From: Chara braunii
Taxonomy: Eukaryota; Plantae; Charophyceae
NCBI GenBank assembly: GCA_003427395.1
Contig: BFEA01000037.1
Location: forward strand, 4,707,477 to 4,771,476
DNA length: 64,000 nt
Reading direction: 5' to 3'
Under the pieces are notes generated by a model. That model ran no database searches. It worked only from the letters and a program-made list of their open reading frames with translations, and had not been told where the DNA came from. Position numbers and translations under genes: made by a program. This document shows, in pieces, positions 1 through 55,626 of this stretch. Numbering within the stretch: the stretch's first letter is position 1; each line of letters opens with the position of its first letter.

Positions 1-96
1 AGGTACCGGCCTGGACTGGCCTACCCCAAATATAACACAGGCCTGTGAGAACAGGCCAAGGGGCTGGTCTCACAGGTCATCCCGAGGTCCGCTACA
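1..96. mobile_element. Partial LTR of the chromovirus family found at 46668-56348
   Basis: Near-identical to the right ends of LTRs 46668-46978 and 56040-56348; ends in GAGGTCCGCTACA. Confidence 0.85.
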
Positions 97-1380
97 GTTA
101 TTGTGTTCAAAAGACCAGTGGTGGGGCTGCAATTCTCGTTGTAGGATCAGGGTGTCACTCATCCCATCAGCCTGCGCGGCCAACAGGCTAGCCGCAAAGA
201 TGCAGGCCTGGCCATTTACCGGTACCACCGCCCGAGCTGCAGTATGGAAAGGCGAAGGCAGACTAATCTGTCCAGCCAATACACTGCATATTCCGACGTA
301 CCGAGTAGTGAGGAGAAAACAGCGGGTTTGAAGACTCACTGGTTGATCGGCCATGTTGGTTACCCTATCAAGCGAAGCAACGGAGTCTGGCTGTGAACGG
401 GGTGCTTGCTGAGACCTAGTGAGGACTATATAGCCAGTATCTATGCAGACTCTGCTCGCTGCATGGCTGGTTAGGCCGCGTTGTTGCTTCACTACGGAGA
501 GGGACGGGACTCAGACTGATTGTTGATCCACGACCCGTATTTTAGGCTGCAGCCGGACTCTTTCAGATCTCGAGCTTGTTGAAGGACTTGAGGTCGTTGA
601 AAGGAGAATTACTGATGCGAACTGAAGGGTTGTCAGAGAGTCAACAAGCTGCTGACTGTTGTCGCTGCTATTTACCGCCGCTATGGTAGCTGCTACTGTT
701 GCTGGTGATCGTCGCTGGGTATTACTGTTGCATCTAAGGACTGTTACAGGCGGTCGTGAGACTTGGGGAGGTGATCAGGCCGAACAAGTAGGGGGTTGGT
801 GCTACGAGTTAGAAGGTCGTCAGGGGACTGATTCTGACAGTTTGACTTCAGAGGTTGGCCAAGCTGATTCATTGGCTGCCGTTGCGGGGCCCTCAGGCAT
901 ATACAGATTTCAAAGCCCTCTCACTGTGAGTTCGAGTTGTCCCACTCCTGGATCTCGAGAGTCTAACCTATCTCCTTCTATCCTTCTTGGTCTAAGTCTA
1001 GCCTGAGGTTACGAGACGAAGGCGGCAAGCGGGATTGAAACCCGTAGGACCGCGCCAAGGCCTCTCTGGGAGGTTCGCCCCACCGATTGCGGGAGCTCTG
1101 CCGGAGCCCGGACGGGGTTCTGGAGGCAGGGAACTTCAGGTATAATCTCGTTTAACGCGTATGATCCCTTCCCCTATCTGTTATCCTTGGGTATCTAAAT
1201 ATAACTATGTCAGGATATTACTGGTTGTTTTGTTACGTATGTCAGGACATGGTTTGCAGAAGGCTAAATGAACAGCTATATATGGGAGATCAGATTTCCT
1301 TTGAGTAAATTCAAACAGAATGAACTGGGGGAAAGTGGGTTGAAGGTGTATTGCCTGCTTTGACCGGGTCAACTCAAGGC

Positions 1381-2590
1381 TGAGCTCCTCTAAGTTGATG
1401 TGGGCTCAGTGCTATGTTTTATTTATGTTTGCTGGGCTGAATGTATGATCTTTAAGGGCCGGGCCTATCCTAAGTTGGACGGACCAGTCGCTGTTTCTTT
1501 CAGGGGTTTCTGAACAGGAGGATCGACACCCTAAGTTGGGAGGTCTCAAAATCCTGATGTTTCTGAAAACAGAGCTGGGAATACTCTAAGTTGCGTGGAC
1601 CCAGTGCTGTGTGTGTTTTCTTCTGAGGGGGACACCGGTATAAGGTTGAGCGTACCCTTAAGTTAGGGCGGCTCAGTCATAAGCCATGAACAGAAAGTCA
1701 ACCAAAAGTATAAAAATTTGATATATATTATACGAACCTTTACCATCTGGCAGGCCGGGCACCCTAAGTTGGGAAAGCCAGTCAATAAGTCAGGTAGAAC
1801 AAAATGAAGAGAGAGGCAAATGAAGAGTATAACGGAAGTAACCCGGACAGACTGAGCGTACCCTTAAGTTAGGGCGGTCCAGTCCTATGCTCGTGATAAT
1901 ACAAAGGTACAGAGAGTTAGTATAAATCTGCTTTTATTTTCCTTTTTAAACACATGGCAGGATTGGATGTCTCCCTAAGTTGGGTAGGTCTGATCATCTG
2001 CCTAATAAGACAGAAACATATAAAGTTTGTGCAAGTATATCAATGGTTGTTTCCTTATAGTCGTTACGGAGACTAAGCGTACCCTTAAGTTAGGGCGACT
2101 TAGTCATACGTCGTTTGTGCTTTGTTCAGACAGATCATGTCTTAAATACGTAAACTGTTTAAGCTAGCTAGGCATACCCTTAAGTTAGGGCGACCTAGTG
2201 ATATGCTCTTGTCGTTGATGTTATGTAGGTTGGACGTACCCTGAAGTTAGGGCGGTCTGACCACTCGTCGTTCGTACTTGTTTTAGGCAAGTTAGGCACA
2301 CCCCTAAGTTGGGGCAGCCGAATCATTTGCCCTATGTAACTTTGTCTAAGGCTGACTAGGCATACCCTTAAGTTAGGGCAGTCTAGTCTTATGCTTCACG
2401 TCGTCAGTTAAGCAGAAGTCAGACGTACCCTTAAGTTAGGGCGGTCTGGTCATATGTTTCATGACTAGAGTTCAAGTGGTGTTGTGCATACCCTTAAGTT
2501 AGGGCAGTCCAGTTGTGCGTACTTTTACTTGTTTAACTAGGTAGGTTTGGCATACCCTTAAGTTGGGGCGTTGCCTGATCATATGCCATA
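1381..2590 (+). repeat. Array of 16 stem-loop units with conserved core (C)CCT-TAAGTT-AGGG / CCC-TAAGTT-GGG and non-repetitive linkers
   Basis: Loop hexamer starts at 1391, 1471, 1532, 1587, 1659, 1765, 1865, 1976, 2086, 2181, 2243 (GAAGTT), 2305, 2369, 2432, 2495 and 2559; flanking stems differ in sequence but keep pairing. Confidence 0.9.
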
Positions 2591-3322
2591 CGCAAAGGGC
2601 TTTACTAAGGGAGAAACTGAGTGATTTAAACGAACTACTTGGGAAAATTGATGTGGGATTGTGAGAGATGTTTGTTTATGTATGTTTGTCGGTTCTCGTT
2701 CTGGCGCGTCTTTTCGATAGGTTAGCTGCCTAGATCTTCGCCAAGTGCTGGAGCCATAGGTAGATGAGATGGATGATGGGAGGGTGACCTTACTTGAAGT
2801 TAGAGTTGATGATAGCTCACGATACCATCTTCTCAAAGGGGATCGTATAAACTACCTCCAATAGTAACTATCAAAGGCAAGTGTCAAAAGTTAGTCCCAA
2901 GTATAGCTTTGCTTTGCCTTTTTATTGTTAACTATGTATAAATCTTGACAGCCTCCTGTTCCTACTGGAAGCGCTGCCGAAATTTCTACAAATCTAAAAG
3001 AGTTAGTCATTTTTGAGCTTGTAGAAATTTTGAAAAGACACTTTTCCTACGGGAAGCGCTTCCGAAATTTTGTAGAATTCGAGGAGCTAGAATAATTTTC
3101 AGCTAGGAGATACTTAGAAAATCCACCTTGGTTAGAGGAGATGTTCGGTGACTTGGTACTAATAGAGGAGCTAGGTTACGACTAGGAGAATGTTATCCCC
3201 TTGATATAAACATAAGTAGTACTTTTCTTCGGCCTGTACTGTGATGCAGGTTTCCATGTTTTCGCTTGAAGGCTTGATCTGCTCAGCCTGTTCCTTCACA
3301 AGAGTTACTTTTCTGTTATCAC

Positions 3323-3928
3323 TGATAACAGGTCGGTTGCCGATTCGTCGGTTTACGACTCAACCCCAATTCACTCTCAATACTCAACCTAAAAAGGCTT
3401 TAGCCCTGATGATTTTATTGTTTTGTTAAGATTTCACCCGGACGTTTATTGAATGGCCATTTAACAAAGGTACTGAGTATTTAATTACGATTGGTTGGCT
3501 GGACGTTGGGGTTTGCATGGCTAAAGTAAAGGGGTATGAGTATGGAGATTGGTTGGAGTTGACTCCGTGTAGTGCATGGACTTTTGTTTGACTCTTTGAT
3601 GTGATTGCAGGTGTGGTCCGTGGCTCGAATTATTAGATTGGACTGTCTGCGATCTCACATATGTGTATGGCTAGGAGGAGTCCCATTGTGATTGTGAGAT
3701 GTGATCGTCACATATCTATTCCCCTATATTTATATAGATGTGCGTATATATATGTACCTGTGCGGGGTATTAGCGTGGCCTGAAGTGACCGCGTATTAAG
3801 GACCTAATCAAGGGTTGGGGTGAATAGAAGGGAGAGGATGACCCCCCTCTACTTTTCTTGAAGAATTTTCGGTCGGACGTTAGCCCTGAGCCGGGAATAC
3901 GATGGTCCTCGCCCAGGACGACCTATCA
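3323..3928. mobile_element. Candidate LTR (TGATA...TATCA termini, internal TATA-like tract)
   Basis: Inverted 5-bp termini; TATA-like tract near 3724-3752; the right end coincides with the point where maturase similarity stops. No partner LTR in the window. Confidence 0.35.
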
Positions 3929-4308
3929 TTAAGTGAACTATCGACCATAATGATGATCGATTGTCCACGAAAGAGTAGTAATTCATGATTCCGAGTATTC
4001 TCTGATTGTAGAATCTTAATATGTCTGCATGATCCATGGAGACTATTCCACGTTTTGCCGTGGATATAAAGTCTCCTTTCAAAAATCCCTGTTCTCGCTG
4101 TGTACTTAACAGTTTCTGATGGGTGCATGCAACACCAATCTTTTCCTTCTTTCGTACCTTTTGCTTTTACCACGCGATATTTGGGTACCTAGGAAGAAGA
4201 ATCCGGAATCAATATGTGATATCTTAATTTCTTTGTTTAGCTCTAGTCCGAGCGTACTTAGAAAGGTTGATATAAGATCACATATCTCAATTGCGTCAGG
4301 AAGAGGGT
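3929..4308 (-). pseudogene. Group II intron RT/maturase fragment (RT domains 6-7 plus domain X), probably an organelle-derived insertion (NUMT)
   Basis: Minus-strand translation LGLELNKEIKISHIDSGFFFLGTQI...LVLHAPIR/(frameshift)KLL...GFLKGD...DHADILRFYNQRILGIMNYYSFVDNRSSLWSIVH matches mitochondrial-lineage group II intron-encoded proteins. Confidence 0.85.
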
Positions 4309-5896
4309 CCCGGGGCTAACACTAAAGGGGTTTTCTCTGATAAGCGTTAAAAGTAGTCATTTTTTTTCCTTGTTGGGATTTTTTTTTGTGGAACGCCAAA
4401 GTTCCGGGCGGAAGGGTTAGCGTGTCGCTGGTGATGCACCAAACAACTCACCACCGCTCCGAATTCCTTCCTGCCCTAGGGACCATCTTACCCCGCGCCC
4501 TTAGGGACACCTCAGGGTGCAGAAGATGGTAAGGCCCTCAGGCCAGTTTTGCGCTCGCTAAAGGGTTGTTCCCCTTAGTGCGCACTTCAGCCGACGCCTG
4601 AGCGTCAAAGGCGACCCCACGGCTCAAATAAGGCCATTTGGGAATGAGCGCCATATTGTGCGTCGTCATCGCAGCTAATCGCGTAGGACTACATTGCGGA
4701 TCGATATGGGTAGGATCTGCGCCCGCGCGATCTTATACTAAAACTTGCGCACGGCAGTTACCGACTTCCGCTACAGAAAGTTATGGGTCGAGCGGAGTCT
4801 CTCGTTTTCTGTGGTTGTTCTCCTTTTTGAGTTTATAGTTGGACGCTGTAGTCCGTGGCAGCCGTCAAAGTCAAACCCCGTGATCTTTGGCCACCACGAC
4901 AGCTTAAAGTTGTTTACTCAACCCCTCTGCACAGGGTGTAGAAGAGGGTGTGGTCATCAACCGCACATGGCGGTTGTCTGGCATTAAGAGATTACCCCTC
5001 AAAGCGCCTGTCAGCCGACACTTGAGTGTCGAACGCGACCCTCGAAGATTATCAAGGGCCGCAAGGCTACGATTACCACATGGTACCCCATCAACGCGAG
5101 TGCTCGCGTATACCCGCATGGCTAGACGATATGAAGAGGCCATGCGCTCGCTCAACATTTATACGGAAGTCCAACGCGCGATACCTATCTGGTTCTTGCT
5201 GCATAGAGTTATGGGTAGAATGTTGAAGGGACTAGGAGTATTGTTGTGTTGTGGTGTTGTGTTGTAGTGTTGTTTGTAGTGGTTGTCTTGTGTGTCTCCG
5301 TGTGGTAAGTGTGAGTATTGTGGTGTAACACGTGGTGTGTGTGGCGCGTCCTAGTCAACCGACGTCGGACCGCGTTTGGGACTTCAGCCCCCTAGTGCGT
5401 CGATTCACGTACGGGTTCGATTTTGGGCGTTTGACCGCGCGCACCCCCTATGCTACAGCGAGCGAGAAACGCCCTCGGCTGGGCCACCTCTGCAATTGCA
5501 TACGAAAAACCTTTGCAAGTGGTTCAGTAGCTCGGCGGGGATACGCCCACCTAAGGGATGGTGACAGCTCCCGCAGGTGGAGGTAAGCGGTGCCTCGCAT
5601 GACCCTGTCATGTCGTAGGGGCTCGCGAGAGGTACGGCTGGCGCAATCGGCCGGAGCGGCAAACGCTCTCCACGACAAGTCTTGTCAAATCCTGCGTGAC
5701 GCGGCCGGGAGGGTCCCCGTGCGGGACCAATGCGCTCGACAACGTGATTGCGACATTAACGAGCGGGCAGCATCTTGGTGTTATCAACATCGACTGGAGC
5801 GCGAAAAGTGTATTGAAGGCATAGGGGATTGGACTTACGACATCATCCGTGGTGGATCATCTGAACTCATGCGATTATAGCCGAAGGGATTGTCGA

Positions 5897-7300
5897 TGTA
5901 CGATCATGAGAGAGGAGGCGTTAGATCTGTGTACGTGAAGGCGAGTTTGCGTCACCATGCCGGAGCAGGAGGGATCGAGAGAGCGGAGTGGACCAAGGGA
6001 ACGCAACAAATAATAGGATCGTGATGATAGACGCAATAAGTATGAAGACAAGAATTACCGAGGCGAGAGGTATGACCAAGAGGACAAGTGGGAACATGGG
6101 CGTAGGCGTCATTGTCTGCTTTCGATGCGACGAAGTTTGACACTATGTCAATCAGTGCCGGAACCCACCTGTTGAAAGGCAGCATTACGAATCGAAGCCA
6201 TCGACATCCTCTACATCTTATCGAGGGAGGTCATACTCACCTAAACACATAGAAAGCAGCTACGAAAGACGAACGGCATCAGCGGACCCACATGTCGCAA
6301 AGCAGATCCGAGAATTGGGCGCTAGCGTAGCCAGAGTTCGTGACTACATAGAACAAGACCGAGTGAAGAAGGCAACGAAAGAGCAGAAGAAGAAGGAGAA
6401 AGAACAAGAGAAGCGTCGTCTAGAAGATGAATGCATGGCACGCGAGCGGCAAGAGATGAAGAAAGTCGACAAGGAGAAAAAAGCAGTAGAAAGAGCGAAA
6501 CAAGAAGCTCTGAAGGATGCGGAACTACGTGAAGAGATGCGTAAAGTGGTGAACATGCAAGTGCACATGCAATTGGGTCAGGTGAATGAGGCTCTACAGG
6601 AGGGGCTGCAACTTACAGCGGAACAGGCGAAGACACTGAGGAGGAAGAAAGGGAAGGAGGAAGTTACCTACCAGAGCGAAGACAAAGAGACAAGCGACGA
6701 AGAGAGTTGTAGCGAAGAAGAGGAATTGAGTCGAAAGACTACTAGGCTGCGCATCTCGGAGAAGAGGAAGAGGGCAGACGAGCACGCGTTCGAGGACAAC
6801 CCTCCGATGGAACTCCCGCCAAAGAGAATCCCAGCTAGGGGTATATTAAAACCATTGAAGTTGTCGACCAAGCTGGCACGCTCGAAGCGTCGTGAATCGG
6901 GTGCAGCGAAGGGCATCAAATTAGCCTCCACGAGAACGCCGAGCAAGACGAAGAAGACACTGGTACGCATGAAGACGCCGTCATCAGCGAAGAAGACACC
7001 ACAGGCAGGTAAAGTAGACAAGACCCCGGGGCAAAACAGAGGTTTGGATAAGTCGGTGTCTTTTGGATCAACGGAAAAGCTGAAACGGAAGAATGCGATT
7101 ATGTTGAGCCTAAGAGGTTTGGACGCACCGACATCGCAGGGGATTTGCAAGAAGGAAGGGATTCCGTACACAGGTAAGATAGACGCAATCTTCGATATTC
7201 GCATCCTGATGGATACGGAGGAAGTGGAGACACGAAGGGAGGACGACGACCAGACTGACGTGGTGACATAGGAGGAGGAGGAAGATGAGATAACCAATCA
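5897..7300 (+). pseudogene. PLE ORF1: gag-like zinc knuckle, coiled coil, basic region and SAP-like C-terminal motif
   Basis: CFRCDEV*HYVNQC at 6117-6158 (Cx2Cx4Hx4C with one stop); ORF 6315-7271 is K/E-rich and ends LRGLDAPTSQGICKKEGIPYTGKIDAIFDI. Confidence 0.7.
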
Positions 7301-7513
7301 CTAGGAAGTCTTAAGCAACGATGTAACATGGCTTTTCGTGGGATTTTTGACTAATTGGAGAAAGACTAGTAGCAAGGTGGACCCCGTTGTCGAATCTCTG
7401 GTACGACTTCTAGTAGTTAAGCTTGCGCTCAATGGATGTATCAGGTGGGCGGAAAAGTGTGTTAAGGCTTGGATTAGTCTCTAAACCAAACATGGTGATG
7501 ATTTGTAAATGTT

Positions 7514-10150
7514 GATAATTGTGTGTATGTGGCGATCTTACCTTATTGCAAATCGCAGTATATAGGTAAGACTAATAGGGACCTTAATACATGCTTGAGG
7601 GAACATATTTAGGCATGCATCGATAAAACTCAGACGCATTTTTATAGATGGGTTAATACTTTCGGAATCCATCAGTATGTGTTAATACCTGTCGATCGAC
7701 ATGAGGGAGCGGAACTTAGTAAATTAGATACAGTTTATATCAAGAAGTGGTCACCGTTTTTGAATTCGGCAGGCACAGGGAAGGCAAAGCCAGGGCAGAA
7801 GCGTTGCGAAGTGGGCAAGAAGGAACGAGTAAGACGAAAGGGTGGGACACGTGTAGCCAATCATCAAGATTTTGTCATCATTAGAGTTCGTGCTAGCGGG
7901 ACTGAGGCTAGTCAGGTTGATTTTTTTTCCTTCCTGAAGAGAAAAAAGGATGAACGAGTTTCGAACTTTACGTTCACGACTACACCTAGGGATACTTGGT
8001 TCCTCGGATGGAAGAGAATTCTTAAACGATTCGGTAAGTCGAGTCTGGAAAATGCATCGGGAGTTTGCCTGTTACACGAGGGCAGACGACTACTGGAGTC
8101 GGGGGGTACGTTCACTATTAATTATCTACAAGTATGGAAGAGACAAGGGAACTCGCATAAGGCAGTCTTGTTGGGTATTTTGCGCAACCCACACCTATTA
8201 TATACCACTAGGCATTGGAAGATCGGAGCAATACTGAGGTTGTACAAATCTGTTAAGGATTTCAGTCGTAAATCTACCAGGAAGTATTTGAGGCGCTTTG
8301 TTACCCACTGCTTTAAGGAGCGTTTTGGTTTGAGTTTGAGTGCGGATTTGAGTTTTCGACTCAGGTATGACGAGAGAGTCAAGTTGGGTGAAGTCCGTAA
8401 AGTAGCTAATGGCCTGTTGATGGGGTGCGACTTACCAGAGTGTTTCAAACTTCGAACGCGCAGAAAGATTCGCATTGTTTGGACGAAAAATCCATCAATT
8501 GGGGATATTATGCATAATCAACGGTCCTTTGCCACTAGATTATTACTTACCTGTCAATGTGCAGGTATGTCCTATCCCAGAGAGGAAGGGCACGTTCGTT
8601 TTCGTTTGAGCGCTTTGGAGAGCTGCCATCCTATGCTAGCTAATGCTAATAGCATTCCTACACCAAAGGTGGGTAACAGGTTGAAGCGGCTGAAGGAGGA
8701 GTTGACCGATGGGTTCGAGGCATGGTTTAATATGCTTGGTAAGCCGCCAACAATTGACATGGGAGCTTCGAAGGGTCGTCTGGTGAATGATGCTTTTACA
8801 AATGGAGACCAACTGACAAGTAAATAAGTACAAGACCTGAAGCAGAGGCTGGATGGTCTAGTCCTTACTCCTTGCGATCGTAATCCGGGTGAGACTGCGG
8901 TGATGTGCCTGGCGGTCTATTATAGATCTATGATGGATACTTTCATATGCAACATAGGATACAACATCATTAAGGCACCAACAAGCGTGATCTTATGCGA
9001 GATTAACGAGACTGTTAAGTCGGAAGATCTGGAGAAGTTTGCCAAATGCGATAAGAAGGGTAAATTTGGTTCAGCCTACGTTATACCAAAGCAGAAGGAT
9101 CTGAGTCGTTTTTGTCCTATCTGCCCAACCTTCAACGAGCCAATGGTCAAGACTGGGAGGTTGGTAGCGAAAGTTTTAAACTACTTACTGACCAAAGTTC
9201 CTATTTCCTGACATTTTAACCTACGGGCTGTATCTTCTTTGATAGACATTATAAAAGTTGTAAATGACAACTTTGTCAGACTTGGACGGGACCTGAGGAT
9301 CGAAACACGGTCCTACGATATCAAAGAAATTTTCAGCAAACTTCCGCATGATGACATAGCTCGAGCTTTGATTTGGTTGATTGCACATCACAGGGAAAAG
9401 AGGCGTCAGTTTGTGCGAGTTAATACAAGAGGAAACGGTTGTTCGTTTGGCAGAACTATAAGTGCAGACCATTGGAGGGATTTGGATCTGTTTGACTTAC
9501 AGAAGTTTGTACTGCTTGAGTTATCTAATACTTACACCACCGCTACTGATGTCCTACTTAAGCAGGTAGTAGGGATACCAATGAGAAAGAGTACGAGTCC
9601 ACCACTTGCTTGCATTTTGTGTGCCTTCTCGGAATACCAGTTTCTGAGCATCCTGGGAAAGGATATGAGACATTTAGGGGGAATCAGACTGATGGATGAT
9701 GTGACGATTTTCACAGCGGTGAGGGACAGAAAACACAGTGCTAGATTATTTGAAGATTTCACTAACTGCTACCCCAGGAATTTGACGCTCGAACGTACAT
9801 ATGTGGGAGATGGAATAGTACCTTTTCTGGGATGCGAGGTGCGGACAACGCAAAAATTTCCTTACATCGGCTGTGTACAGGTATCAAAAAATGAGGGCTC
9901 TGTGTGGGAATCGGAAACCTTGGTGTTTCAAAATTGACAATCATTCAAATCTTTTGGTTGTACAGAAAAGTGCAGTAATTTGTGGGTACTTGCACAGGAA
10001 TGATCGGAATACATCAATTAGATCCGAAATCCCTCTGAGAGTACTGACTCTGGAGAAGGAATAGAATATATAAAAGGATTCAACAGGCGTTTCTTTCTAC
10101 GGGTTCTGCAACGATTCAGTGCGCGGCGTGAACAGTACTAGAAACTTACC
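7514..10150 (+). pseudogene. PLE ORF2: GIY-YIG endonuclease plus reverse transcriptase, with nonsense mutations
   Basis: One reading frame runs 7514-9937 with stops at 7610, 8825 and 9209. Motifs: CVYVAILPYCKSQYIGKTNRDLNTCLREH (GIY-YIG), VYIKKWSPFLN, LTPCDRN (DKG-like), SYDIKEIFSKLPH, QVVGIPMRKSTSPPLA, RLMDDV, PFLG. Confidence 0.9.
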
Positions 10151-10949
10151 TTCAAACTAATGAAGGAGAGGAAGGTGATGTGACAGAAGACCAGGATCGG
10201 TCCATGGCCGACCTCTGTAACTGTGTAATGTTTCTTTTGGACGGTAACTGGATTTTTTGTCCTACTTTTCTTGTCAATGTCGGTATTGGTTTTGGTTTAT
10301 CAAGTTGGATTTCTCTGTGACATATGTGATTTTTAGTTTTTTTAGCTATTGAAGTTTCGTATGGTAGTTTAAGAGTACAGAGCATATGAGGATTTCATAG
10401 AGATAGATCTGGACAGGGCCTTTGACACGTAGTAGCAATTGGACTTTATGTGTCCTCTACTAGAATAGAGAACCCCGCATGGAATAGGGGTTATTTCTCA
10501 TGTAACGGTAGCTTTGGAGTTTTCTTGAAAAATGTAGTTTAGTTGAGTCAGTAGGCCAAGGCGGAGCGGGGAAAATGAGGGACTTCGAAAAACATCTTGA
10601 CCGGTTTCGTAAAGGGAGTTAAGGCCTATACCTGCGTCTATCCAGTAGTGGGCGTAATATTTTGATATTCCGGGGGTATTTGCAGTCACTGAGTAGGCAG
10701 GTCCTGTCGAGATAGTCACGAATCATGGGACTAAGGATCAAATTGTTTTTTCTAAGTGGGAAAAGCAGGACCACAAAATGGCCGCGGTAACATGCCTAAA
10801 GTACTTATTCCGTAAGCACTTGGGCATCGATCCTTTTCGCAGGTCAACGTGCTCTAGTTCGCCCTGTACCCATTGGATGCAGGAGGACGAAAGGATGGAG
10901 ATGGGTATGTTGGGAAAAAGGTATAGTAGCAAGGGAGAAGTGGAGGTAA

Positions 10950-10997
10950 TCCCCATGAGGAGACGGTCTGACAACCGTCGAAACGCCGCGTCGGGGA
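10950..10997 (+). ncRNA. Minimal type I hammerhead ribozyme (C3 position reads A)
   Basis: TCCCC-ATGAGGA-GACGG(tctgacaa)CCGTC-GAAA-CGCCGCG-TC-GGGGA: stems I and II pair perfectly, stem III is short and near-palindromic, GUC cleavage triplet present. Confidence 0.8.
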
Positions 10998-23869: not shown

Positions 23870-26400
23870 CCATCTCTCGTTCAGGTCCAGATCTTCCCAA
23901 GGCCGGCCTTGTGGCCAACCTGGGTGCCAACCTCTTGACCTTTGAGGTGACCTACCACCTCGTCGATGTGGGGACCGACTAGGATGTTGACGATTCGGTG
24001 GGTGACCTTGACACCTACCTCCCACTCGACGGTTCCCTTCACCGCCAACCCCCTGTGCGCCCGATCCTCGATCTCCCGTGGCCTGGCCCCTTTGGCCCTT
24101 ACCTCCACCTCTACTTTGCGGCCTCCCTCCAGCCGCGACCGCGACAACCGCATAGGACCTCCCCTGACCTACGCTATTGTCCTCCTCCTCAAGTCCCCAC
24201 TCAATCTGACTGTAGGGGACCTCATCAGTACCACCTTCATCTAAGGTAAGGATCAAATGATCCTTGACCCTAACTTGGCCAGAGATGGTACGACCCTTTC
24301 ATTTTTTGCCTTTATCCAAGTCCTTGTGCCAGATAGTGGAAATTGGCATGGACTTCGCCTCGAACAAGACCACTTCCCTACTCGGCGCGTCATATGTGAT
24401 ATTGGGCTATTGGGTCTTGTCAAAGAAGTGCCCTCGCAAGGGCTCTGGCATGACATGATAAAACAACTGGACCAACTGGGTCTCTGTGACCCCATGGTCC
24501 GAGACGGCTACCAAGTCGTCCATGACAGCTTTGAGTGCTCGCGCACTCCTCGACTGTCTCGAGTGGATGGTTTGGAGTTTGTCAGAGGCCCTGACGCCTC
24601 TCGTGACTTCAGCGAACCTCTCACGCAAGAGTTTGAGGAACGTGGAGAGAGGGGTAAGCCTAGAATAAGCAATCCTGTTATGCTCGCAATCGGCGGCGAG
24701 TGCGAGGGACCTGGCTAAGCTAGCTGCTTCGTCCTTCAACGCATGGAAGGCGACGAGGACTTGCTCCTCTGGGGCAATGTGCTGTAAATAAACGTAAGTA
24801 TTAACGCTAGGCTGCCAATTATCGAAGTTATCGTCCTTCTTCCCGCTGTAAGAATCAGAAAAGTTGAGGTTTACAAACTCTTTGCGGGGACGCGACTCGG
24901 CCTCTGCTGTGGCCACCACTTTGGCACCCTCAATGGCGCCGGCACAAAACTTCTTTGCACTTTCCTTTAACTTTTTTACTTCGGTCCCAACGTGGGTAAC
25001 CACGTCGCGCGCAAACTCTCTGAAACCAGATCGGATGGCATGCAGGGTCCCATCATGACCCTTGTTGCCTGATGCTCCTCAAGCTAGGCCTCGCTCAGAA
25101 CCTAGAGATACCCCAGAATCTTATCTAATTTCGCGGGACTCTTTGCTTGTGCCTACACCTCTTGTTTGCATGCGCGAACTCTCTCCCCCTCTCTTGCCAC
25201 CTAGTTGGCTTCCTCCCTCCTCTTCTTCTCCCTCATCATACGTAACTTTCATTCCAACTTTTTCTTGTCTTCTATTGTCTGACGTTCCAGGGGCTCTTTT
25301 ATCGCTTCCAACTACCTGACAAATGTCTCTCTCTCCTCCTGCGGCACGTATAGTTGTGCCTCCTCATCCTCCCCCAACGATAAATTCGCTACCCATTCAG
25401 TTATCTTCATCTTCATCCACTCGTCTTCTCCCTTCGTGCCACTCCCCTCTCCTCTTTCTCCCCTATGCCTTCTTTCAAGGGGCTCTTGGCACGTATAATT
25501 GTGCCTCCTCATCCTCCCCCAACGATAAATTAGTTCCCCATTCAGTTATCTTCTTCTCCATCCACTCATCTTCTCCCTTCGTGCCACTCGTCTCTCCTCT
25601 TTCTCCCCCATGCCTTCTTTCAAGGGGGTCTTCTTCTTTTTCTTCCTCCTCCTCTGCTGCTGCTTCTTCTTCGGCAGCCTTTCTCTTCTCTTCCTCCTCC
25701 CGCTGTATCATGAACATCTTCTCTTTCTGAAATTTCATCATCTCTTCTTCTAACTACTTCTTTTTCGCCGCCTGCTCCTCTGCGATTGATTTTAGCTTCC
25801 CCTGCTTGAGGAGCTCTTTCTGCTCTTTTGTTTTTCTCAGGAGGACGACAATCCGGGCTTGCTCGGCCTCGGATTGGGGGGCAGTACTCTTCCCACTACG
25901 GGTGTCAACCATGATGACAAGTGCACAACCAGACAATGGTTCCACTCCTCACCACTTAGACTCTACTCCCCCTGACCGACAAACCTACTGACTCAATAAT
26001 CTAAGGACTTACAAAATCCGGACAGATCTTGTCAACTAGGGTCTCTAGCCTAGACTTACTCTAAGGCTATCACTACAAGACATGTTGCTGATCAGGAGGC
26101 ATTTAAGGAGATCCCCCGTAACTCCTCAGGAATTATTTAACATTGCAGATAGGACAACGCGATCAGCAAGTCTTCTCAAGACTTAGACGGCCTGTTGTGC
26201 AGCTCACAACTTGGATTTTGGGCCTACCGTGCCACACCGAGCAGCCCGCTGGTCAGTACCGATCCTTCGAAGGGTTCGTGTCCTCCGGGACAGTCGAGTC
26301 GTCAAACATAGTCTTTAGCCCTACTCAGCCCGTGTAGGTTTGGTCAACAAGGCTCTATCCTTCATCCATAGAGTTTCTATCATCTGGACAGAAGAGACTC
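23870..26400 (-). mobile_element. Truncated Ty3/gypsy element: leader/LTR end plus decayed gag
   Basis: MVDTRSGKST... coiled-coil N-terminus; retrotransposon-gag-like ORF 24407-25003 (DSYSGKKDDNFDNW...LKDEAAS...LRERF); block near 26089 resembles the block at 60068. Confidence 0.75.
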
Positions 26401-46129: not shown

Positions 46130-49100
46130 CACCCGCACCTAAAATCCCGAACCTACATGCCCATGCGCGCCACTATTTTCCGAGCCTTTTGCATGAGGGT
46201 ACCTGCAATGGGAATTTCGGAAGTGGCACTGGTGCCACCGGTCTGCCTGAACTGAAAAAAGAAAAGAAAAGAAAAGAAACAAACAAACATGCCAACGAGC
46301 AATGATATCGTGAAAGGACGTCATGGAGGTCATAAGCAAATGATCACTTTCCTGAATGCATCTGACCACTATTACAGCGAGAGGGAAACATTGTTGTCTC
46401 CTTTTTTTCTCGTTTTGTTTTTTTTCTTCCCGACCCTGCCAGCAAGCCAACGCATATTCCTCTTGGTCAAAACGCCCTCGCTGAGGGCATACTCGCACTA
46501 GCCACGTTGAAATGCATCCGACCACTTTCACGGCCAAAGTGTTGTTGGCTTTTTTTTCTTTTTTCTTTTTTTTAAGAGTTCGAGAGTCCTCCTCCCCGTG
46601 TTCTACGTTCTGCTGAAGTACCCTCACTGAGGGCAAACTCGCACGAGTACTCCAAACAATGTATCCATGTGGCGGACCCACCAGGTGTGGTGCTCCGCCT
46701 GGGATAGAGATGGAGATGGAGGAAGAAGGGGGAGCGAGATGGCACATCGCAGCTCCTACGCTAGACTCCAATGCATGAACTCCAAAGTGTGCGAATGTAG
46801 AATTATCCGAAAAAAAGACAACAGCTTGGGTATACCCCAACGAACTGACTGGACTCGACTGGACTGGACTGGCTGGTACCGACAGAGGTATCGGCCTGGA
46901 CTGGACTACGCCGAATACACAGGCCTGTAAGAACAGGCCAAGAGGCTGGTCTCACAGGCCAACCAGAGGTCCGCTACACGATCCTCGGCCTGTGATGGAT
47001 CGCCTAGTCCAAGAAGCGAAGCTCTACCAAAGAAAAAGAAAACCTGAGTAGTCTAGGATGCGGAGGAAGCTCCATGCTAAGTCCATGCGATGCAACCTAA
47101 GATAGAAAATGTCACAAAAACAGCAATGTCACAACTAAAAGCCTAACTGGAAGCAGAAGCAACTAACTAGCATACATGTCCTAGGAAAGCAGAAAGTAAT
47201 AACAACTAGATCCTAAAATGTTGGAGACAGTAGCCTCAGTCTGGAAATAACTGACTAGTGTATAAGTCATAAGAACAGCAAAAGCAAAACAACTAAAATC
47301 CTAACAATGTCAGAGGCAGTAGCCTCAGTCTGAGTGCAACAAAGCAACAACAAGGCAACCATATGTCACAGGAGGAATGTGTGGCAAACCAAAGGGTGGG
47401 ATGCTCTCTGAGGGTGGCGAATGCAGCCTAGGGGTCGATAACTCCTAAGGGCATCCACACATAATGACAGGGGAACACATGTCATTAGGCTCAATGAGGG
47501 TAGGGAACCGGGAACGAACAAAACCAATGACCCTAACAGATAGACCACCAGGGCGGGTAATGCTCGACTAAAGGGGTGACCGCTATGGAGGGTTGACCAC
47601 GCAAGGGAACAAGGGAGCCTGGTATACTGGGCGCACCTAGATGAAGCATGTCAGGCTGCCTAACTAGGGCGTGAGGCCCGGCAGAGGGTAGAAAAAGTGA
47701 TGCGTAAGGGAATCATGCTAACGACTCCTTAGGTGGGGGAAGTCGGAGCTGGATCCGTAAGCTGGGAAGCCAAGGCAATGCTACGGTCCCGATGCCTATG
47801 CGTATACCGAGGGAGACCCCAACTCAGAGGAACCCGGAGAGGGGAGACCATCATGTGACACAACCAGGGTACCGTACAGGGTAAGGTGGTAAGAGAGTGA
47901 CGACGTCTGAAGTAGGCAGAGCTGATCATGACGAAGTTCATCAAGCTGACGATTACGTCCATGATGAGAAGTTTGGAATGCCGTCGATGAGGAGCCGCAA
48001 CGTCGACGAGCTGAAGTGGCAAAACTGGAGTGGATGGAGTACTGAGAAGTCAAAGACATGGGAAGATAAGTCAGAGTCAATCGTCGTATCGAGCAGGACG
48101 ACGACGAGTGCGTTGTGGACGCTCAGAAGCATCCGGCTGCCGCTGAAGGTCTGCCTCAGATGAAGCAAGCTCAACTTCAACGGTCTCCTCAACTGAGGGA
48201 GGAGGGTCGATGGGCCGAGGAGGAGTAGTCAGCCCAGCACGACGAGCACGGTCATAGGTACGCACCAACATGCGAGCGTGCTGCAAGTGCTCGAGGGGCT
48301 CCCAAGTAGCCTCCTCATCAGGGTAACCCTTCCAACGTACGAGATACTCGACATGGGGAGGGTTGTCGTCGGTGACTCGGCGACCAATGATGTCTGAAAC
48401 GAGGAACTCCTCGTGGCCGTCCACCATGATGGGTGGAGGGCGCTCGTATGGTCGTCCAACGAAACGCTCGGATGGTCTGCGATAAAAGGGACGCAGTAAT
48501 GAGACGTGGTAGACATCATGCACACGAGTCTGGCGTAGGTACTCTGGCAGCTTCACACAGAAGCTGACCGAGCTAAAAGCCGTATCAGAACCGGCGGCTT
48601 GGAGAATGCGGCATGGGCCAAAGAAGCGACATCGAAACTTGCAAAGCGTGTCCGCTTCGAGCTGTAAGTGGCGGGCGTCGATAAGCACATCATCACCGAC
48701 TTTGAATGGATGATCCATCCTCGATCGGTTCGCACGTGCTGCCATGTGAGTCTGGGAAGTGGCTATGTGCTCATGCGAGGTCTTCATAATCGACGTCATG
48801 TGTGCAACCCAATCATACAGCGAGGGACAACTCGTGTCGGGGTGCATCTGTGACGGTCGAAGGAAATCCGCGGGAACACGAGGGTGATAGCCGAGGTCGC
48901 AATAGTAAGGCGACATCCCCGTGGCTGGAGAGACGGCGTGCTTGTAGGCTATCTCCGCGTGGGCAAGATGAAGATCCCACTGCTGGTCGTCACAAACAAC
49001 TTTTCGAAGAATATCTCCGAGAGTCCTTTTCGTGACCTCGGTCTGACCATCAGTCTGAGGATGGGAAGACGAGGAAAACCTGAGTTGGGTGCCGTATACC

Positions 49101-52100
49101 TCGTGGAGCCGTCGTCAGAATCGGTTGGTAAAGCGCGGATCACGGTTAGATATGATGCTTAGAGGTAAGCCGTGGTCACGCACGACTCGGTCAAACACGA
49201 TGTCGGCGACCTCACCTGCACTGATGGCATAGCGGTACGGAACAAAGCGTGCGCGCTTCGTGAAGCGATCGACGACGACCAGGATAGCATTATGACCTCG
49301 GGGGGTGGGAGGACGAAGAGGACCGATGAAGTCCATCGAAATGGACTGCTAACGACCCCAAGGGATAGGAAGAGGTTAAAGGAAACCATAAGACAGGTGG
49401 TTCGCACTGTTCACCTCCTGACAAGTGGGACACTCTGCTACGTAGTCCTTCACAAAGTCCTTGCGCTTCAGCCAGACGTACAGGCGGCTCACACGAGCCA
49501 ACGTCTTGTGGAAGCCCATATGATCGGCGGCTGCCTGGACATGGAACTCTGCTACTGCCCGGACATGTAGCTGTCCAGTGGAGGGAACGCAAATATGGGG
49601 CTCTTTGATGCCCTGTGAACCGTGCCAGTACACAAGACCGTTGTCCCCGAGAGAGTAGTTCAGGACGGTCTTGCCACTTCGAAGAGTCGCATGGATGTCA
49701 TGATAGTTGGGGCAAGTGGCGGTACTGAATGCGAAACTCGTCGATCACCGACTGGTGGACGGTGGTGACCAAGATGCAGCGAGCCGGATCTGGTCGAGAT
49801 CATGGTCAGGGCGTCGGGATAAGGCATCTACGACCCGCTTAGTCTCACCCTTAATGTGCTCAATGGTGAAACTAAACTCGGATAGGTCGCGCCACCAGCG
49901 AACCCGTCGAGGAGTGAGCTTCGGCTTTGTTAGAAAAGCCTGGACAACAGAGTTGTTCATGTGCACCGTGAATGGTGCCCCGTGCAGGTAGTGACGTCAG
50001 TGTCGAGCGGCATAAGCTACTACGAGAACCTCACGTTCATCAGCAGTGTAGTTTATTTCGACGGGCAGGAGCTGACGAGAATAAAAGGCTGTCGGACAAT
50101 CACGTGAGCGAAACTCGACAGTGCCGTCCTCGGTGATGGTAGGAAATAATTAATAGAAGGTTCGTAAGTAGTTGGACGAGTAGACGTCAGGCGGGAGGCA
50201 GTGGCAAGGGTAAGGGGTGGGAAGCGAGGGATACGAGGATGAGAGGAATCAGGACTCAGGAGAGGGAAAAATTTGAGAAAGCACTGCTCCTACAGCAAAG
50301 TCTGACGCATCGGTGGTAAGGATAAAAGGTCGATCAAAATCGGGTACGGTGCACATATCACCGCCTTCTTGAGGGTGTGGAAGGCGTCCTCGTGGAGGGG
50401 TGTCCAAGCCCATGGCGGGTTCTTCTGGAGGAGGGTGGAGGTAAGGACGTAGGAATACCTAGTGTATCCCTAGATGACATTACTACAGCAGCTAGTGAGG
50501 CCTAGGAAGTTGCGAAGCTGCTTGGCGGATGTGGGGACGGACCACTCCGCAATATCAATGATTTTCGCGTCCTCCATGTGGAGACCCTGGTCAGACACGT
50601 AGTATCCTAAGAACGGGGATCGAGAGTCTGTAGGGTGCCTGGTGGTGAACACAATAGAGAGGCACAAGCTGGATGGAATGCTCGACGTTGCGCATCGGTG
50701 GGATGCAGGCGTACGAGAACGACGATGGGAAAACGTTGTGGTACTCTCGACCGAGGTCACGAATTGTGGGCTACAGGTCGGTCGTATAGCGTGCGAGTTC
50801 CTCAGCGTCAGCGTCAGTGCGCGACGGCGGGGTGGACTCGACGGGCGGCGGAGGGAGGGAAGTAGAGATGGGAGCCATGGAGATAGAACGAGGATCTGGC
50901 TCCAGAGAGATGAGCTCGGCGTCTGGATAGGGTGGATCATAGTGCAAGAGATCCGTAACGTTCACCGTAAAGAAGGTGACGCCGTCCTGTCGGATGAAGT
51001 GAGCGAACTGCCGAGGCGAGGTGACGGTGATAGTAGGAGATGGTGTGGGCACGGAAGGCTCCGGGGGAGGAGGATCGGGACGTGATGTCCCAGTGGTACC
51101 TATGAAAAGTACGCGATACGTCTATCCAAACTTCGTTTTGAGAACGAGAGTGTTGGTCGCCCAATCGGCCTCAGTGCTACGGAACCGATGAGACCACGGA
51201 GTACCGAGAATGAAATTGTACCTCATCTCCATCACATCGAAACGTGCAGAGGAGCGGTGGCGACGAGAAGCCGGGGGACAATCAGTCGGCTCGAGAGTGA
51301 GGAAGAAAGGGAGATCGGTGACCATCTGATCGAAGAAGCGCTGGGTTTTATCATCCCCTAAGGTGACAGAGATGGGAGTCGAAGACCCTGTCGTGGGTAA
51401 GTAGGCTTCTTTCACCACACGTGGGTGAATAAAGTCGCCCTGAGAGTCGAAATCCCACAACGTTGAATACACCCTCGTGGAGGTCCCTAGTCGTACTAGA
51501 ATGATCGGGAGGGTGCAATCAGGGTCAGAGAGGATGGTGAGAAGGTGACGCAGTGCAGCGACATGGAGGGTGAGTCGCTCCTGACGAGCCTGGAGCATGC
51601 TCAAGTCCAGAAGAGAGGACACAACGTCCTCGCAAGTCGCAAGCTGCTCGCTGCAACGGGCTAAGCGAACGGCTCCAAGCGTCGGTAGTCGCGGAAAGGT
51701 AGGAGGGGAGACGGTGGTCTGCGGAGGCACAGACGGCACTACGACAGAGGGTTGAGTACACTCTGTCGGGTCCTGCGATACCTCAACTTCAGTAGCGAGA
51801 GGGGCGAACCGCGATGGGCATGTCTGGAAGCCATCTATGGAGGAGGGCGCAGGTGTACACTGCACCGTGGCTAGGAGGCGCCGCGGGGGTGCAAGGCGCC
51901 GGGGGGGGACTGAACACGACGCTGGCGGGAAAGGTCAGCATAGTGGCGATTAAGGGCCGCGGCGTAAGGGCACCGCAAGGAGGTATGACCGTCCTGGCGG
52001 CCTCGCAAACACCCACGCCGGCCCAAAATGGCCGCGCACTCCTCAGCGGAAAGGACACCGCGAGGAGGGACAAAGCCCTGAGGGAGGTCCTGCTGAGGGA

Positions 52101-55100
52101 CCTCGGGGGGCAGCTGCGTGCCCGGAAGAAGGCGGAGAGGATGCGCTGGAGGCGCTCAGCCATAGGGAGAGTAGAGTCCTCCAGGAGGTAGTGGACGGCC
52201 TCGTCGAGGTCGAGGTCGTTGCTATGGTCACCCTCAGGCGACAACGGGGCAACAGCGTGCTGCTCACCATACTCAAGCGCGCGAAGTGGCGGCCCTGCTG
52301 AGCGGAACGGCGAGGGCGACCGCGGAAAGGGAAGCGGCGCTGGGAAGTGCCCTGAAAGGAGGAGGCATAGCCAGTATGCTGAGGCTTGGAGAAGGAAGCG
52401 GGGTGAAGACGGGCCCACATCCGCTGATGGGTCCTGGCGGCCTCATAGGCCTGCGGGGCCGATGTGAACTCGTACCGCCATAACTCGGAGCGGTACTCAA
52501 AGGGAAGGTTGGCCAAGAAATGGTCGATGAAGGCAACCTCAGGGAGGAACGCCACAAATGAGGCGGGCGTCCTGAAAGACCTGGATGTGGTGGTCCAGGC
52601 CGACAGCGTCACCAGAGCCAGACCAGCGTGTGCTGACGACGCGCTCGAAGGCGTCAGTAACGTCATGTCGGGCTCCGAAACGGTCCTCGAGGACCGCCTG
52701 AAAATCCATGAAGGTCGAGGTCCAACCCTCATGAAAGGAGTGCGTGTAGAGATCCTCCCAAGCGTCGAGGGGACCGCCACGCAGGCGCGTGGAGATGTGA
52801 CCCACCCACGTGCCGAGTGGGGCGCCCATGAGCTGGAGCGTTCGGGTGGCAGACTGCAGCCACCGAGACACACGTATCCCTGTACCATCGTACAAGGCAA
52901 TGTCCGCCAAGCGAACGAGTGGTGAGCCACCGTTTTGGCGGCGAGGGGATCGAGGAGCAGAGGCCTATGCTACAACTGACTAAGTCGGCGTTGGTCCTGG
53001 AAAACAGGGCGCAGCTGATTGTACGCCCAGGCCGCCTGGGGGAGCGGCGGGGGCAACGGCGGCAAGCTGCGAGGGAGATGCGATGGAAGAGGTCGCAGCA
53101 ACCGAGGGAATAAGAAGAAGGTAGGATGGGGATGGATAGGGTGCAAGGCGAGGGAAGCGAGCCTACATGAAAGGAAGAGCAAAGGAACGGGGTTCGCCCG
53201 AAGGCGCGGCCACCTGTGAGGGTAGAGATGGCTGAAGGCGTAAGAGGGCGAGGTCGGGCCGGGTCTGGGCAAGCTCGTCCTCGAGGCGTCGAACGTAGAT
53301 TGAGCGAGGAGTGGCAGGAGGAAGAGTGGGGGAAGTGGACGTACGAGCGGCGCGGGGCATCCCACAGGGGGGAGAGTCAGATGGCGCTGCGGTCGTGCGA
53401 AGGGGAGGGAGAAGGGGGGCACCTAAAAAAGCTGAGACCATGGCAGCAAGTTGTGGTCCCGTGGCCGTAGTGACCGAAATCTAGGCAGGTGCGCCCGTAG
53501 AGCAGGGGAGGGTCTGGGTCGTGGAGGCCGTCGCGCTAGGAGCGTGGACGGTCACCAGCATGGCCGGGTCGGGGGCGGAAGAGGAGGAAGCTCCGTCGTT
53601 GCCACCATATCGAGGGACGGGGGACCTGGACTGGGAGCCAGGAGGAGAGGGGGGAGAGGAAGGACAGCCAGCGTCCTGGAATTACCGCAGGCCAGCGGCA
53701 AGAGTCGCCACCTGCGCCTGTAAGGGCGCCAGAAGGGAGGCGAGGAGGGTGTGCAGATCCCCCTGGGCTGATGGCCATGGCCCGCCGGCACGGATATGGA
53801 GCCCGGTGCCGAGGTCGTCGCCGCGTTAGTGGCTTGTGACACGCTGTCGGTCATGGGGAGGTGACGAGCCGGACTGGAGAGGAGGGCGTAAGGGGAGGTC
53901 CGTGGTAGAAAGTGGCGGGCGGCGCTAGCGAGTCGAGCGCGGGTGCCCGCAAAGGGGGAAGGGTGGTTCGGGTCCAGGGTGCCCAAATGGAAAAGGGGAA
54001 GTAGGAGAGGGTTTAGGAAAACCCTAAACCCTAGAAAAAGCCTAACTGGAGTTTGAGTGGTTAGGGTAGGGTACCGATGACATAATCAAGAAAATAAAAA
54101 ATAGTAAGAATGGGGGAGGCGGAACAAAAATAAATAAACAGTGCAACTTCGAAAAAAAATTAAATATAAATAAATAAACAATAAAAATAATTAAAAAAAT
54201 AAATAAACACAACGTGAAAAGAAAAATAATATTTATTTTTTTGGAAATTTCGACACCATTTCCTTACCCCCAATGAGGTCAAGAATGTGCCAAGGGAAAG
54301 GAGAGACCAAAATAAACCAAGTTTCAAAATACCAACAACTAAAAATTTCAAAAAATAAATACATAAATAAAAAATATAAATATAAATAAGTAGATGAGGA
54401 GGTGGAAAAAAATGAAGTGTCTGATTTTTTAAGAATTTCGGCAGCATTTCGTCACCCCCATGGGGTCGAAGTATGCCATCAAGAAGAAAGGCAAAATAAA
54501 ATGAGGAGATTTTGCCAGCACTTCGCTACCCCCAAGGGGTCAAAATGTGTTGAAAAGACTAAGTGACAAAAAACAGAAAATTTTGGCAGCACTTCGTTAT
54601 CCCCACGGGGTCTGAATGTGTGCCGAAAGCAAGAATGACCAACTCCTAATCAGATTTAAGGGTGCCGCAAGGAAATTCGAATTTTCAGAATAAAATATTA
54701 AAAAAATAAAATAAATCAAAAAAAAAGAAAAGAAAGTGGGGAATAAGATAATTCGAATTTTTGGAAAAAGAGGAAAGATAAATCAAAAGAAAGAAAACAA
54801 AAAAACAGAAAAAAATCGAAAGTAGGAGGGAAGGGGGATGAAAAAGTGAAGGGGAAAAAAAAGAAATAAGTGGGAGAGAGAAAAAGAGTGAAGGGGGGAG
54901 GTGAGGGAAGTGATAGGTTGTAGTTGGGGGAGAGGAGGGTGCGAGAATGGGAGAGAAAGGGATGGGAAGGGTGGGGAGGGATCAAGAAGCAAAGAGAAAA
55001 GGGGGAGAAAGAAAAGAAAATAAATGAGTGAAGTAGAGTAAAATAGTGGGTGGTGCGAGAAAAGGTGGGGTGGGGAGAGGGGTACGAGTGGTGAGAGTGA

Positions 55101-55595
55101 TTAGAAGGAAATGAGTGAGGCAGAAGAGGAAAAAGTAGAGGGGGTGAGTAAGAGGAGAGAGAAAAGGTAGAGAAAGTGGGTTAGTAGGGAGAGAGAAGAG
55201 AGTGGGATGATACCTGGCCCTTGGTGTCTCCAAGGGCACAAGGCATACCAAGACCAGGAGGGTCTTGGCCTTCGCTGCCACAAGCAAGCTGGAGGAGAGG
55301 GGCTGAGATCTTGATCAGCCCCTAGAAGCAGTACTGCAGATCTGCAGATCCAGGGTATGTTGTGTGAGCAGACCCTCACCAGTGTAGAGCAGCCCCCTGA
55401 TCAGGAGGGTCTTCAGTTCCACAACAAGCTGCCACGTGGCACTGGAGATGGCCACGTGCACAGGCAGCAGCAGCCACGGCGGGGTGGGGTGGGGNNNNNN
55501 NNNNNNNNNNNNNNNNNNNNNNNNNNNNNNNNNNNNNNNNNNNNNNNNNNNNNNNNNNNNNNNNNNNNNNNNNNNNNNNNNNNNNNNNNNNNNNN

Positions 55596-55626
<31 letters not shown>

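What the first reader, a model, noticed from the sequence alone, without database searches (positions are those of the whole stretch)
1381..2590. Array of 16 covarying RNA stem-loops with a conserved UAAGUU loop, in a CRISPR-like layout, in eukaryotic DNA
Seen in the sequence: a conserved core, CRTACCCT-TAAGTT-AGGGCR, recurs 16 times. Loop-to-loop spacings are 80, 61, 55, 72, 106, 100, 111, 110, 95, then a regular 62, 62, 64, 63, 63, 64. The flanks differ in every unit yet still pair with each other: GGTTGAGC/GCTCAGTC, GACTAAG/CTTAGTC, GGTTGGAC/GTCTGACC, GACTAGGC/GTCTAGTC, GATTGGAT/GTCTGATC. After an AT/ATA bulge there is often a further outer stem (GGCAG/CTGCC, GGCAA/TTGCC). The inner stem also covaries (CCCT/AGGG, CCCC/GGGG, TCC/GGA). 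Read on the + strand, G-U pairs clearly outnumber A-C mismatches. Inference: selection has preserved a three-tier hairpin (hexaloop, RUA/CR internal loop, AUA bulge) rather than a sequence. It could be a multimeric protein-binding or packaging array, or a precursor cut into ~63-nt RNAs. Ordinary satellite drift does not produce this. I do not recognise the motif from any known family.
Basis: partly seen in the sequence, partly recalled or inferred. Interest (0 to 1): 0.9.

Follow-up and report, generated by a model that had tools for sequence, protein, structure and literature searches.

The report
Hairpin row in algal retrotransposon leader
A very abundant mobile repeat of the stonewort alga Chara carries sixteen small RNA hairpins just behind a conserved splice-donor-like site; their stems change but stay paired and their loop differs between subfamilies, which suggests an untested, retrovirus-like tag marking the unspliced RNA for export or packaging.

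Summary
The array is real: 16 hairpins, the stated spacings, and stems that covary beyond shuffled controls. The full core is exact in only 7 units. The DNA is Chara braunii or a close relative. The array lies in a ~3-kb repeat (about 742-3712) with roughly 10^3 related copies, probably a giant retrotransposon LTR; termini, target duplication and primer site were not shown. It starts ~230 nt behind a structured, conserved block ending in a splice-donor-like AG|GT. A sister subfamily (L001) has the same block, donor and lead-in, but a UAAGAU loop on a CCA/UGG stem. Family RNA is on the + strand and is thinner over the array than over the block. CRISPR, H/ACA and miRNA tests fail; there is no Rfam or literature match. 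Best reading (0.5): a multivalent protein-binding tag retained only in unspliced RNA, for export or packaging. Splicing, the protein partner and in-vivo folding are unshown. The scan noted such arrays many times elsewhere in this genome.

The parts
742..3712 (+). High-copy repeat carrying the array; probable giant LTR (ends inferred: TGTTACA at 742, GATCGTCACA at 3703-3712)
   Evidence: Summed DNA contig depth is 100-260 at 151-750, mostly 4,000-300,000 from 751 to 3750 (lowest bin 2,600) and 1,250 at 3751-3900. Window 742 aligns with TGTGACA at L001:631 (weak region). No matching target-site duplication or primer site was seen.
941..1139 (+). Conserved structured block (putative leader exon) of several hairpins; the most transcribed part
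   Evidence: 74% identical to L001:821-1013. 32 consensus pairs, 5 with double compensatory changes, none broken between the two subfamilies. RNA depth is 26-55 on +. Single-sequence z is only -1.0.
1096..1131 (+). 14-bp hairpin with a GGA bulge just before the donor
   Evidence: All pairs kept in L001, with 2 double and 2 one-sided changes in the upper stem.
1137..1145 (+). Splice-donor-like site CAG|GTATAA (GT at 1140-1141)
   Evidence: Same position in L001 (GAG|GTAATC, GT at 1019-1020). Loose ends behind 1134-1135 read AG|GT in DNA and in X7, and AG|AT in X9 and X6 RNA (agreement ~0.5, weak). No splice junction was seen on this stretch.
1325..1375 (+). G-rich lead-in and small TGAC/GTCA hairpin preceding unit 1
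   Evidence: Conserved in L001 at about 1227-1285.
1370..1800 (+). Hairpin units 1-6 (1-4 and 6 of the looser CCC-UAAGUU-GGG class; unit 5 canonical)
1842..2216 (+). Hairpin units 7-10, with long unrelated AT-rich linkers
2220..2596 (+). Hairpin units 11-16 at 62-64-nt period (tandem-duplication origin, stems diverged but paired)
   Evidence: Linkers related to each other, p<=0.002. Other copies carry G at 2485 (pairs) and A at 2327 (AUA bulge), where this copy differs.
2951..3071 (+). High-copy downstream module with a long hairpin and a duplicated GGAAGCGCT motif
   Evidence: Depth 117,000-190,000; fold; repeats.
3211..3331 (+). Two tandem acceptor-like sites (AG ending at 3249 and 3331); further candidates at 2720 and 3610
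   Evidence: Sequence inspection; 2720 and 3331 pass the pyrimidine filter; duplicated tract D19. Use as acceptors is not shown.
3311..3530 (+). Most abundant module of the repeat
   Evidence: Depth 145,000-303,000; RNA on both strands.

Best explanation
The array is a cis-acting RNA element of a Chara giant-LTR retrotransposon family. Steps: (1, shown) the repeat is high-copy and transcribed on the + strand. (2, shown by covariation, not by probing) each unit is selected to fold into a bulged three-tier hairpin that displays a fixed hexaloop. (3, inferred) transcripts start upstream of the conserved block, and the donor at 1140 either splices the array out or is skipped. (4, inferred) only the unspliced genomic RNA keeps the 16 hairpins, which bind many copies of one protein, either Gag or an element-encoded Rev/CERV-like or host export factor, and so route that RNA to export and/or particles. 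(5, inferred) the loop and top pair (UAAGUU on CCC/GGG or CCU/AGG here, UAAGAU on CCA/UGG in L001) are homogenised within an array and differ between subfamilies, as expected for a self-recognition tag. Unit number changes by unequal exchange or template jumps.
For: Covariation. G-U over A-C excess on +. Over 1351-2550, first-mate '-' depth sums are 11.1 vs 0.49 (X7) and 6.05 vs 0.48 (X9). Strandedness is calibrated by the minus-strand maturase fragment, where first-mate '+' dominates (37 and 49 vs ~0 at 4201-4350). RNA per DNA depth is 3-12 times lower over the array than over the leader block. The block-donor-lead-in-array order is the same in L001 with a different loop. DNA joints delete or repeat whole units (2118>2419, 2278>2219, 1634>2354). 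Established biology: retroelements need cis elements or accessory proteins to export and package unspliced RNA (PMC5035971, PMC10309623, PMC12786077).
Against: No splice junction was observed. The RNA drop after 1135 is largely matched by a drop in DNA depth (mappability). Most RNA reads are under 99% identical, so they come from other copies. LTR identity is not proven here (no paired LTR, TSD, PBS or linked gag). No partner protein was identified. The whole-array fold allows inter-unit pairing, and the minus strand folds at least as well. One of three calibration bins (4051-4200) has the opposite strand bias. Only two subfamilies were compared.
Confidence: 0.5

Rival explanations
1. Splicing-control element: the hairpins bind a host or element factor that suppresses the nearby donor and sets the spliced/unspliced balance (like the Rous sarcoma virus negative regulator of splicing; own knowledge), with no role in export or packaging.
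For: Fixed position ~230 nt behind a conserved donor in two subfamilies; both AG|GT and AG|AT loose ends occur in RNA.
Against: A subfamily-specific loop is hard to explain with one host splicing factor. Splicing itself is not shown.
Confidence: 0.15
2. Single-stranded-DNA element: the hairpins act on the long cDNA intermediate during reverse transcription (pausing, strand transfer, nucleocapsid loading) or as DNA protein-binding sites.
For: Minus-strand folding is as good or better (z -4.0 vs -2.0); DNA energies are symmetric. If the repeat is an LTR with a long U5, the array would lie in strong-stop DNA (inference).
Against: G-U/G-T wobble is favoured on the + (RNA-sense) strand, not on the minus cDNA. 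Double-stranded binding sites would not need covarying stems.
Confidence: 0.12
3. Neutral origin: tandem duplication plus template-switch 'correction' of quasi-palindromes creates covarying stems without selection.
For: Units 11-16 are duplicates; unit number varies between copies; retroelements replicate with frequent template switches (own knowledge).
Against: Template switching gives perfect Watson-Crick symmetry. It does not give a one-strand G-U excess, a constant asymmetric 3x2 internal loop and AUA bulge, or the same architecture with a different loop in a sister subfamily.
Confidence: 0.1
4. Precursor of small RNAs: an endonuclease recognises each hairpin and releases ~63-nt units that act as guides or decoys.
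For: Regular 62-64-nt period in the last six units; conserved loop that could be a cleavage signal.
Against: Spacing is irregular (55-111 nt) elsewhere. Linkers are paralogous, short and U-rich, without targets in 314 kb. No nuclease gene nearby. No read-end pile-ups (table 6, poly(A) libraries only).
Confidence: 0.08

Closest known systems
Retroviral export elements: HIV-1 RRE/Rev, MPMV CTE, mouse IAP RTE and MusD MTE (PMC5035971, PMC12786077)
   Same: Structured cis element in a retroelement, placed so that it would be retained only in unspliced RNA; multivalent binding is plausible.
   Different: Those are single folded domains. This is an expandable row of independent hairpins in a leader or LTR intron. 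No Rfam match. Plants lack the NXF1 route (PMC12786077).
Cer1/CERV of C. elegans (PMC10309623)
   Same: LTR retrotransposon in which a spliced message and unspliced genomic RNA must be told apart; precedent for a Rev-like system outside retroviruses.
   Different: No CERV-like protein was identified here. My term search of the paper found no response element or stem-loop.
Retroviral packaging signals (Psi) in structured 5' leaders (PMC5035971)
   Same: Hairpin-rich leader and a donor followed by structured RNA that Gag could bind.
   Different: Psi is a few distinct hairpins, mostly 3' of the primer site. Here up to 16 isostructural units seem to lie inside the LTR; no PBS was found.
CRISPR arrays
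   Same: Interspaced units with a palindromic core.
   Different: Stems vary per unit, spacing is 55-111 nt, linkers are paralogous, there are no cas genes, and the host is a eukaryote.
Intron-bearing plant LTR elements Ogre and EVADE (PMC12786077)
   Same: Splicing separates RNA pools in a plant LTR retrotransposon.
   Different: No hairpin array is described for them in the review read ('stem-loop' does not occur).

Membership tests
LTR of a Ty3/Gypsy retrotransposon | High-copy dispersed repeat with subfamilies | tested here: met
   Depth profile; sister copy L001.
LTR of a Ty3/Gypsy retrotransposon | TG...CA termini with short inverted repeat | tested here: inconclusive
   TG at 742 and CA at 3712 coincide with depth edges; the inverted repeat is imperfect here but a 6-bp match to L001:631.
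LTR of a Ty3/Gypsy retrotransposon | Target-site duplication, or flanking PBS/PPT | tested here: inconclusive
   AGGAC vs TATCT do not match and no TGG follows 3712; the true ends are uncertain and the flanks are disrupted by insertions.
LTR of a Ty3/Gypsy retrotransposon | Paired LTR and linked gag/pol | tested here: inconclusive
   No second copy in the window. The upstream ORF has no homologues. Earlier scan notes report linkage elsewhere; not checked.
Export/packaging element (RRE, CTE, RTE, Psi) | Present on sense RNA of the element | tested here: met
   + strand reads dominate over the array at family level.
Export/packaging element (RRE, CTE, RTE, Psi) | Restricted to unspliced RNA | tested here: inconclusive
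   Conserved donor-like site and lower RNA over the array, but no junction read.
Export/packaging element (RRE, CTE, RTE, Psi) | Sequence/structure homology to described elements | tested here: not met
   No Rfam match at E<=10 in window 1-6000; only chance-level hits in L001.
Export/packaging element (RRE, CTE, RTE, Psi) | Specific protein binding and activity | not testable with these tools
   Needs experiments.
CRISPR array | Near-identical repeats with unique spacers of constant length | tested here: not met
   Mean column identity 60%; linkers 20-76 nt and paralogous in units 11-16.
CRISPR array | Adjacent cas genes in a prokaryote or phage | tested here: not met
   Neighbouring ORFs are transposon proteins of Chara; core absent from viral, metagenome and GTDB scans.
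H/ACA single-hairpin guide RNA | Pseudouridylation pocket 14-16 nt from an ANA box (own knowledge) | tested here: not met
   The internal loop is only 3x2 nt and the AUA lies 10 nt from the upper stem; no Rfam hit.
miRNA cluster | Duplex of ~21 bp or more with a conserved arm and free loop (own knowledge) | tested here: not met
   Stems of 4+8+4 bp broken by bulges; the loop is conserved and the arms vary.
Satellite/minisatellite | Head-to-tail homogenised copies | tested here: not met
   Not reported by Tandem Repeats Finder, although units 11-16 arose by duplication.
Hammerhead-bearing Penelope-like or retrozyme terminal repeats | Hammerhead ribozyme core | tested here: not met
   No Rfam hit in window 1-6000.

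The most novel reading that the evidence does not exclude
Chara giant-LTR elements run a complex-retrovirus-like RNA sorting system. An expandable intronic array of isostructural hairpins is a natural multivalent tag (like MS2 arrays), and its loop sequence is a subfamily-specific code read by a co-evolving element-encoded protein (Gag or a Rev-like factor from the spliced message). Each subfamily thereby exports or packages its own RNA, and non-autonomous elements compete by adding units.
Probability: 0.3. Interest if true: 0.85.

Novelty: new variant of a known kind. Interest (0 to 1): 0.66.

Why it matters
A recent review states that RNA export of plant LTR retrotransposons has not been studied directly (PMC12786077), and the cis signals are largely unknown (own knowledge). 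A discrete, covariation-supported element with about 10^3 natural variants and subfamily-specific loops makes the question directly testable. It could also supply orthogonal hairpin-protein pairs for RNA tagging. If the neutral or DNA-level rival holds, the interest is modest.

Tried and rejected
Rfam on window 1-6000 and L001 500-2200: nothing above chance. Exact-core scans of metagenome, viral and GTDB contigs: none. Protein searches with the minus-strand ORF at 70-510 and the piece at 2894-3046: no homologues, so neither is treated as a gene. A covariance-model search of the window plus 12 Chara loci (250 kb of non-N locus DNA) found only the two training arrays; L012:18286-18343 (E=0.02, 24% GC) was judged chance. 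An early idea that the element runs on the minus strand (a PPT-like purine tract next to 2950) was dropped because RNA is on + and DNA depth continues past 2950. The 311-bp LTR ending at position 96 belongs to a different chromovirus family. No complement of the loop occurs on + within the repeat, so there is no loop-receptor pairing. Literature searches for the motif or for Chara LTR hairpins found nothing relevant; the library lacks most subscription papers, and the Chara genome paper did not come up.

Full report
Observation. The loop (TAAGTT, once GAAGTT) with a closing CC/GG stem is common to all units. The full 20-nt core is exact in 7 units and close in 3; six units are a looser class. 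On a three-tier structure (4-bp top stem, 3x2 internal loop, 8-bp middle stem, 3-nt AUA bulge, 4-bp outer stem), 77% of cells pair against 70.5% in shuffles. Double changes number 31 against 15.6, and slid registers pair 31-46%. Single units fold as drawn, with z from -1.8 to -3.6. The outer tier is the weakest. These controls do not correct for relatedness between units.

Host and setting. The window's chromodomain integrase is up to 86% identical to Chara braunii CBR proteins, so this is Chara or a very close relative. The rest of the window is transposon debris. Positions 1-96 are the end of a 311-bp LTR of another family, whose full element lies at 46668-56348 with an ATCCA duplication. 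About 3760-4345 is a minus-strand fragment whose translation I read as a group II intron maturase (own knowledge).

Parent repeat. Summed depth of genomic contigs laid at 80% likeness is 100-260 over 151-750, then mostly 4,000-300,000 from 751 to 3750 (lowest bin 2,600), with 10,000-25,000 over the array. With single contigs at about 15, this means very roughly 10^3 related arrays; the tool warns this is not a copy number. The depth edges coincide with a TG at 742 and GATCGTCACA at 3712. I found no matching target duplication, primer site, second LTR or linked gene. 'Giant LTR' is therefore an inference, helped by unchecked notes from other windows of this scan. Contig joints remove or repeat whole units, so the array expands and contracts. 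At 2485 and 2327 nearly all other copies carry the base that pairs or keeps the AUA bulge, so this copy is slightly decayed.

Sister subfamily. One of 12 Chara loci fetched (L001, scaffold BFEA01000005.1) has a 74%-identical block, the same donor-like site and the same G-rich lead-in. Seven hairpins follow, with loop TAAGAT (once TAAAAT), mostly on a CCA/TGG stem. Together the 23 units give 65 double changes against 27.6, including the top pair switching among U-A, C-G and A-U. G-U outnumbers A-C by 50 to 14 on the + strand, more than composition predicts (p=0.002). The upstream block keeps all 32 predicted pairs, with 5 double changes between the two subfamilies, including a bulged hairpin just before the donor.

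RNA. In two stranded poly(A) libraries, first mates lie on '-' across 751-3150, so the RNA is on +. The maturase fragment shows the opposite pattern in two of three bins, which calibrates the direction. Depth peaks at 1051-1200 and is 3-12 times lower over the array after dividing by DNA depth. Reads that leave the window behind 1134-1135 continue AG|GT in DNA and in one RNA set, and AG|AT in two RNA sets, with weak consensus. This fits a donor that is sometimes used, but no junction was seen, and divergence between copies explains much of the drop. Most reads come from other copies, so expression of this locus itself is not shown.

Mechanism. Shown: a high-copy repeat, sense transcription of the family, covarying hairpins, a conserved order of block, donor-like site and array, and a loop that is uniform within an array and differs between two subfamilies. 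Inferred: splicing removes the array, unspliced genomic RNA keeps it, and a protein binds it many times to route the RNA to export or packaging (0.5). Retroelements are known to need such signals (PMC5035971; PMC10309623; PMC12786077). Against it: whole-array folding lets 7 of 16 hairpins be replaced by inter-unit pairing on +, and the minus strand folds at least as well. Rivals are splicing control (0.15), a single-stranded DNA role (0.12), neutral duplication with template switching (0.10) and a small-RNA precursor (0.08). The last is weakened because the linkers are paralogous, short and without targets.

Comparison and novelty. It works like a retroviral export or packaging element but is not a member of any described one (no Rfam match). 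It fails the CRISPR, H/ACA, miRNA, hammerhead and satellite tests. I found no paper describing it, within a library that lacks most subscription journals. The scan has noted these arrays, and the donor/intron layout, in many other windows of this genome. I noted the donor reading before seeing the notes on it, but repetition by AI readers is not independent evidence. Verdict: real, unpublished as far as I could find, a new variant of a known kind, function untested. Interest 0.66.

Noticed in passing
window 46668-56348: Chromovirus-type LTR element on the minus strand with 311-bp TG...CA LTRs (46668-46978, 56040-56348; 89% identical) and an ATCCA target duplication; another LTR of the family ends at window position 96.
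   Followed up: partly
window 3760-4345 (-): Fragment resembling an organellar group II intron maturase (frameshifted), inserted right after the array-bearing repeat; used to calibrate RNA strandedness.
   Followed up: partly
window 6100-10180 (+): Degenerate element with a CCHC-like motif, a long charged coiled-coil ORF (6315-7271) and a Penelope-like reverse transcriptase region with an MDD motif (7613-9934); no Pfam hits in the pieces; assignment from memory.
   Followed up: no
window 15425-16195 and 22042-23767: Inverted arrays of a 70-71-bp repeat bracket about 8 kb; already noted by the scan as a candidate mobile element with a PrimPol-type finger.
   Followed up: no
window 97-741: Low-copy stretch upstream of the repeat with a minus-strand frame that has one stop in ~230 codons, but no protein homologue anywhere.
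   Followed up: partly
window 3314-3330: Perfect palindrome TGTTATCA-C-TGATAACA overlapping the acceptor-like site at the start of the most abundant module.
   Followed up: no
window 1370-2596: The core is nearly self-complementary, so units can pair with each other; possible dimerisation or an alternative fold.
   Followed up: partly
L001:1735-1792: One sister-subfamily unit has a different inner stem (GAUC/GAUC around UAAGAU) and is the most stable (z -5.3).
   Followed up: no
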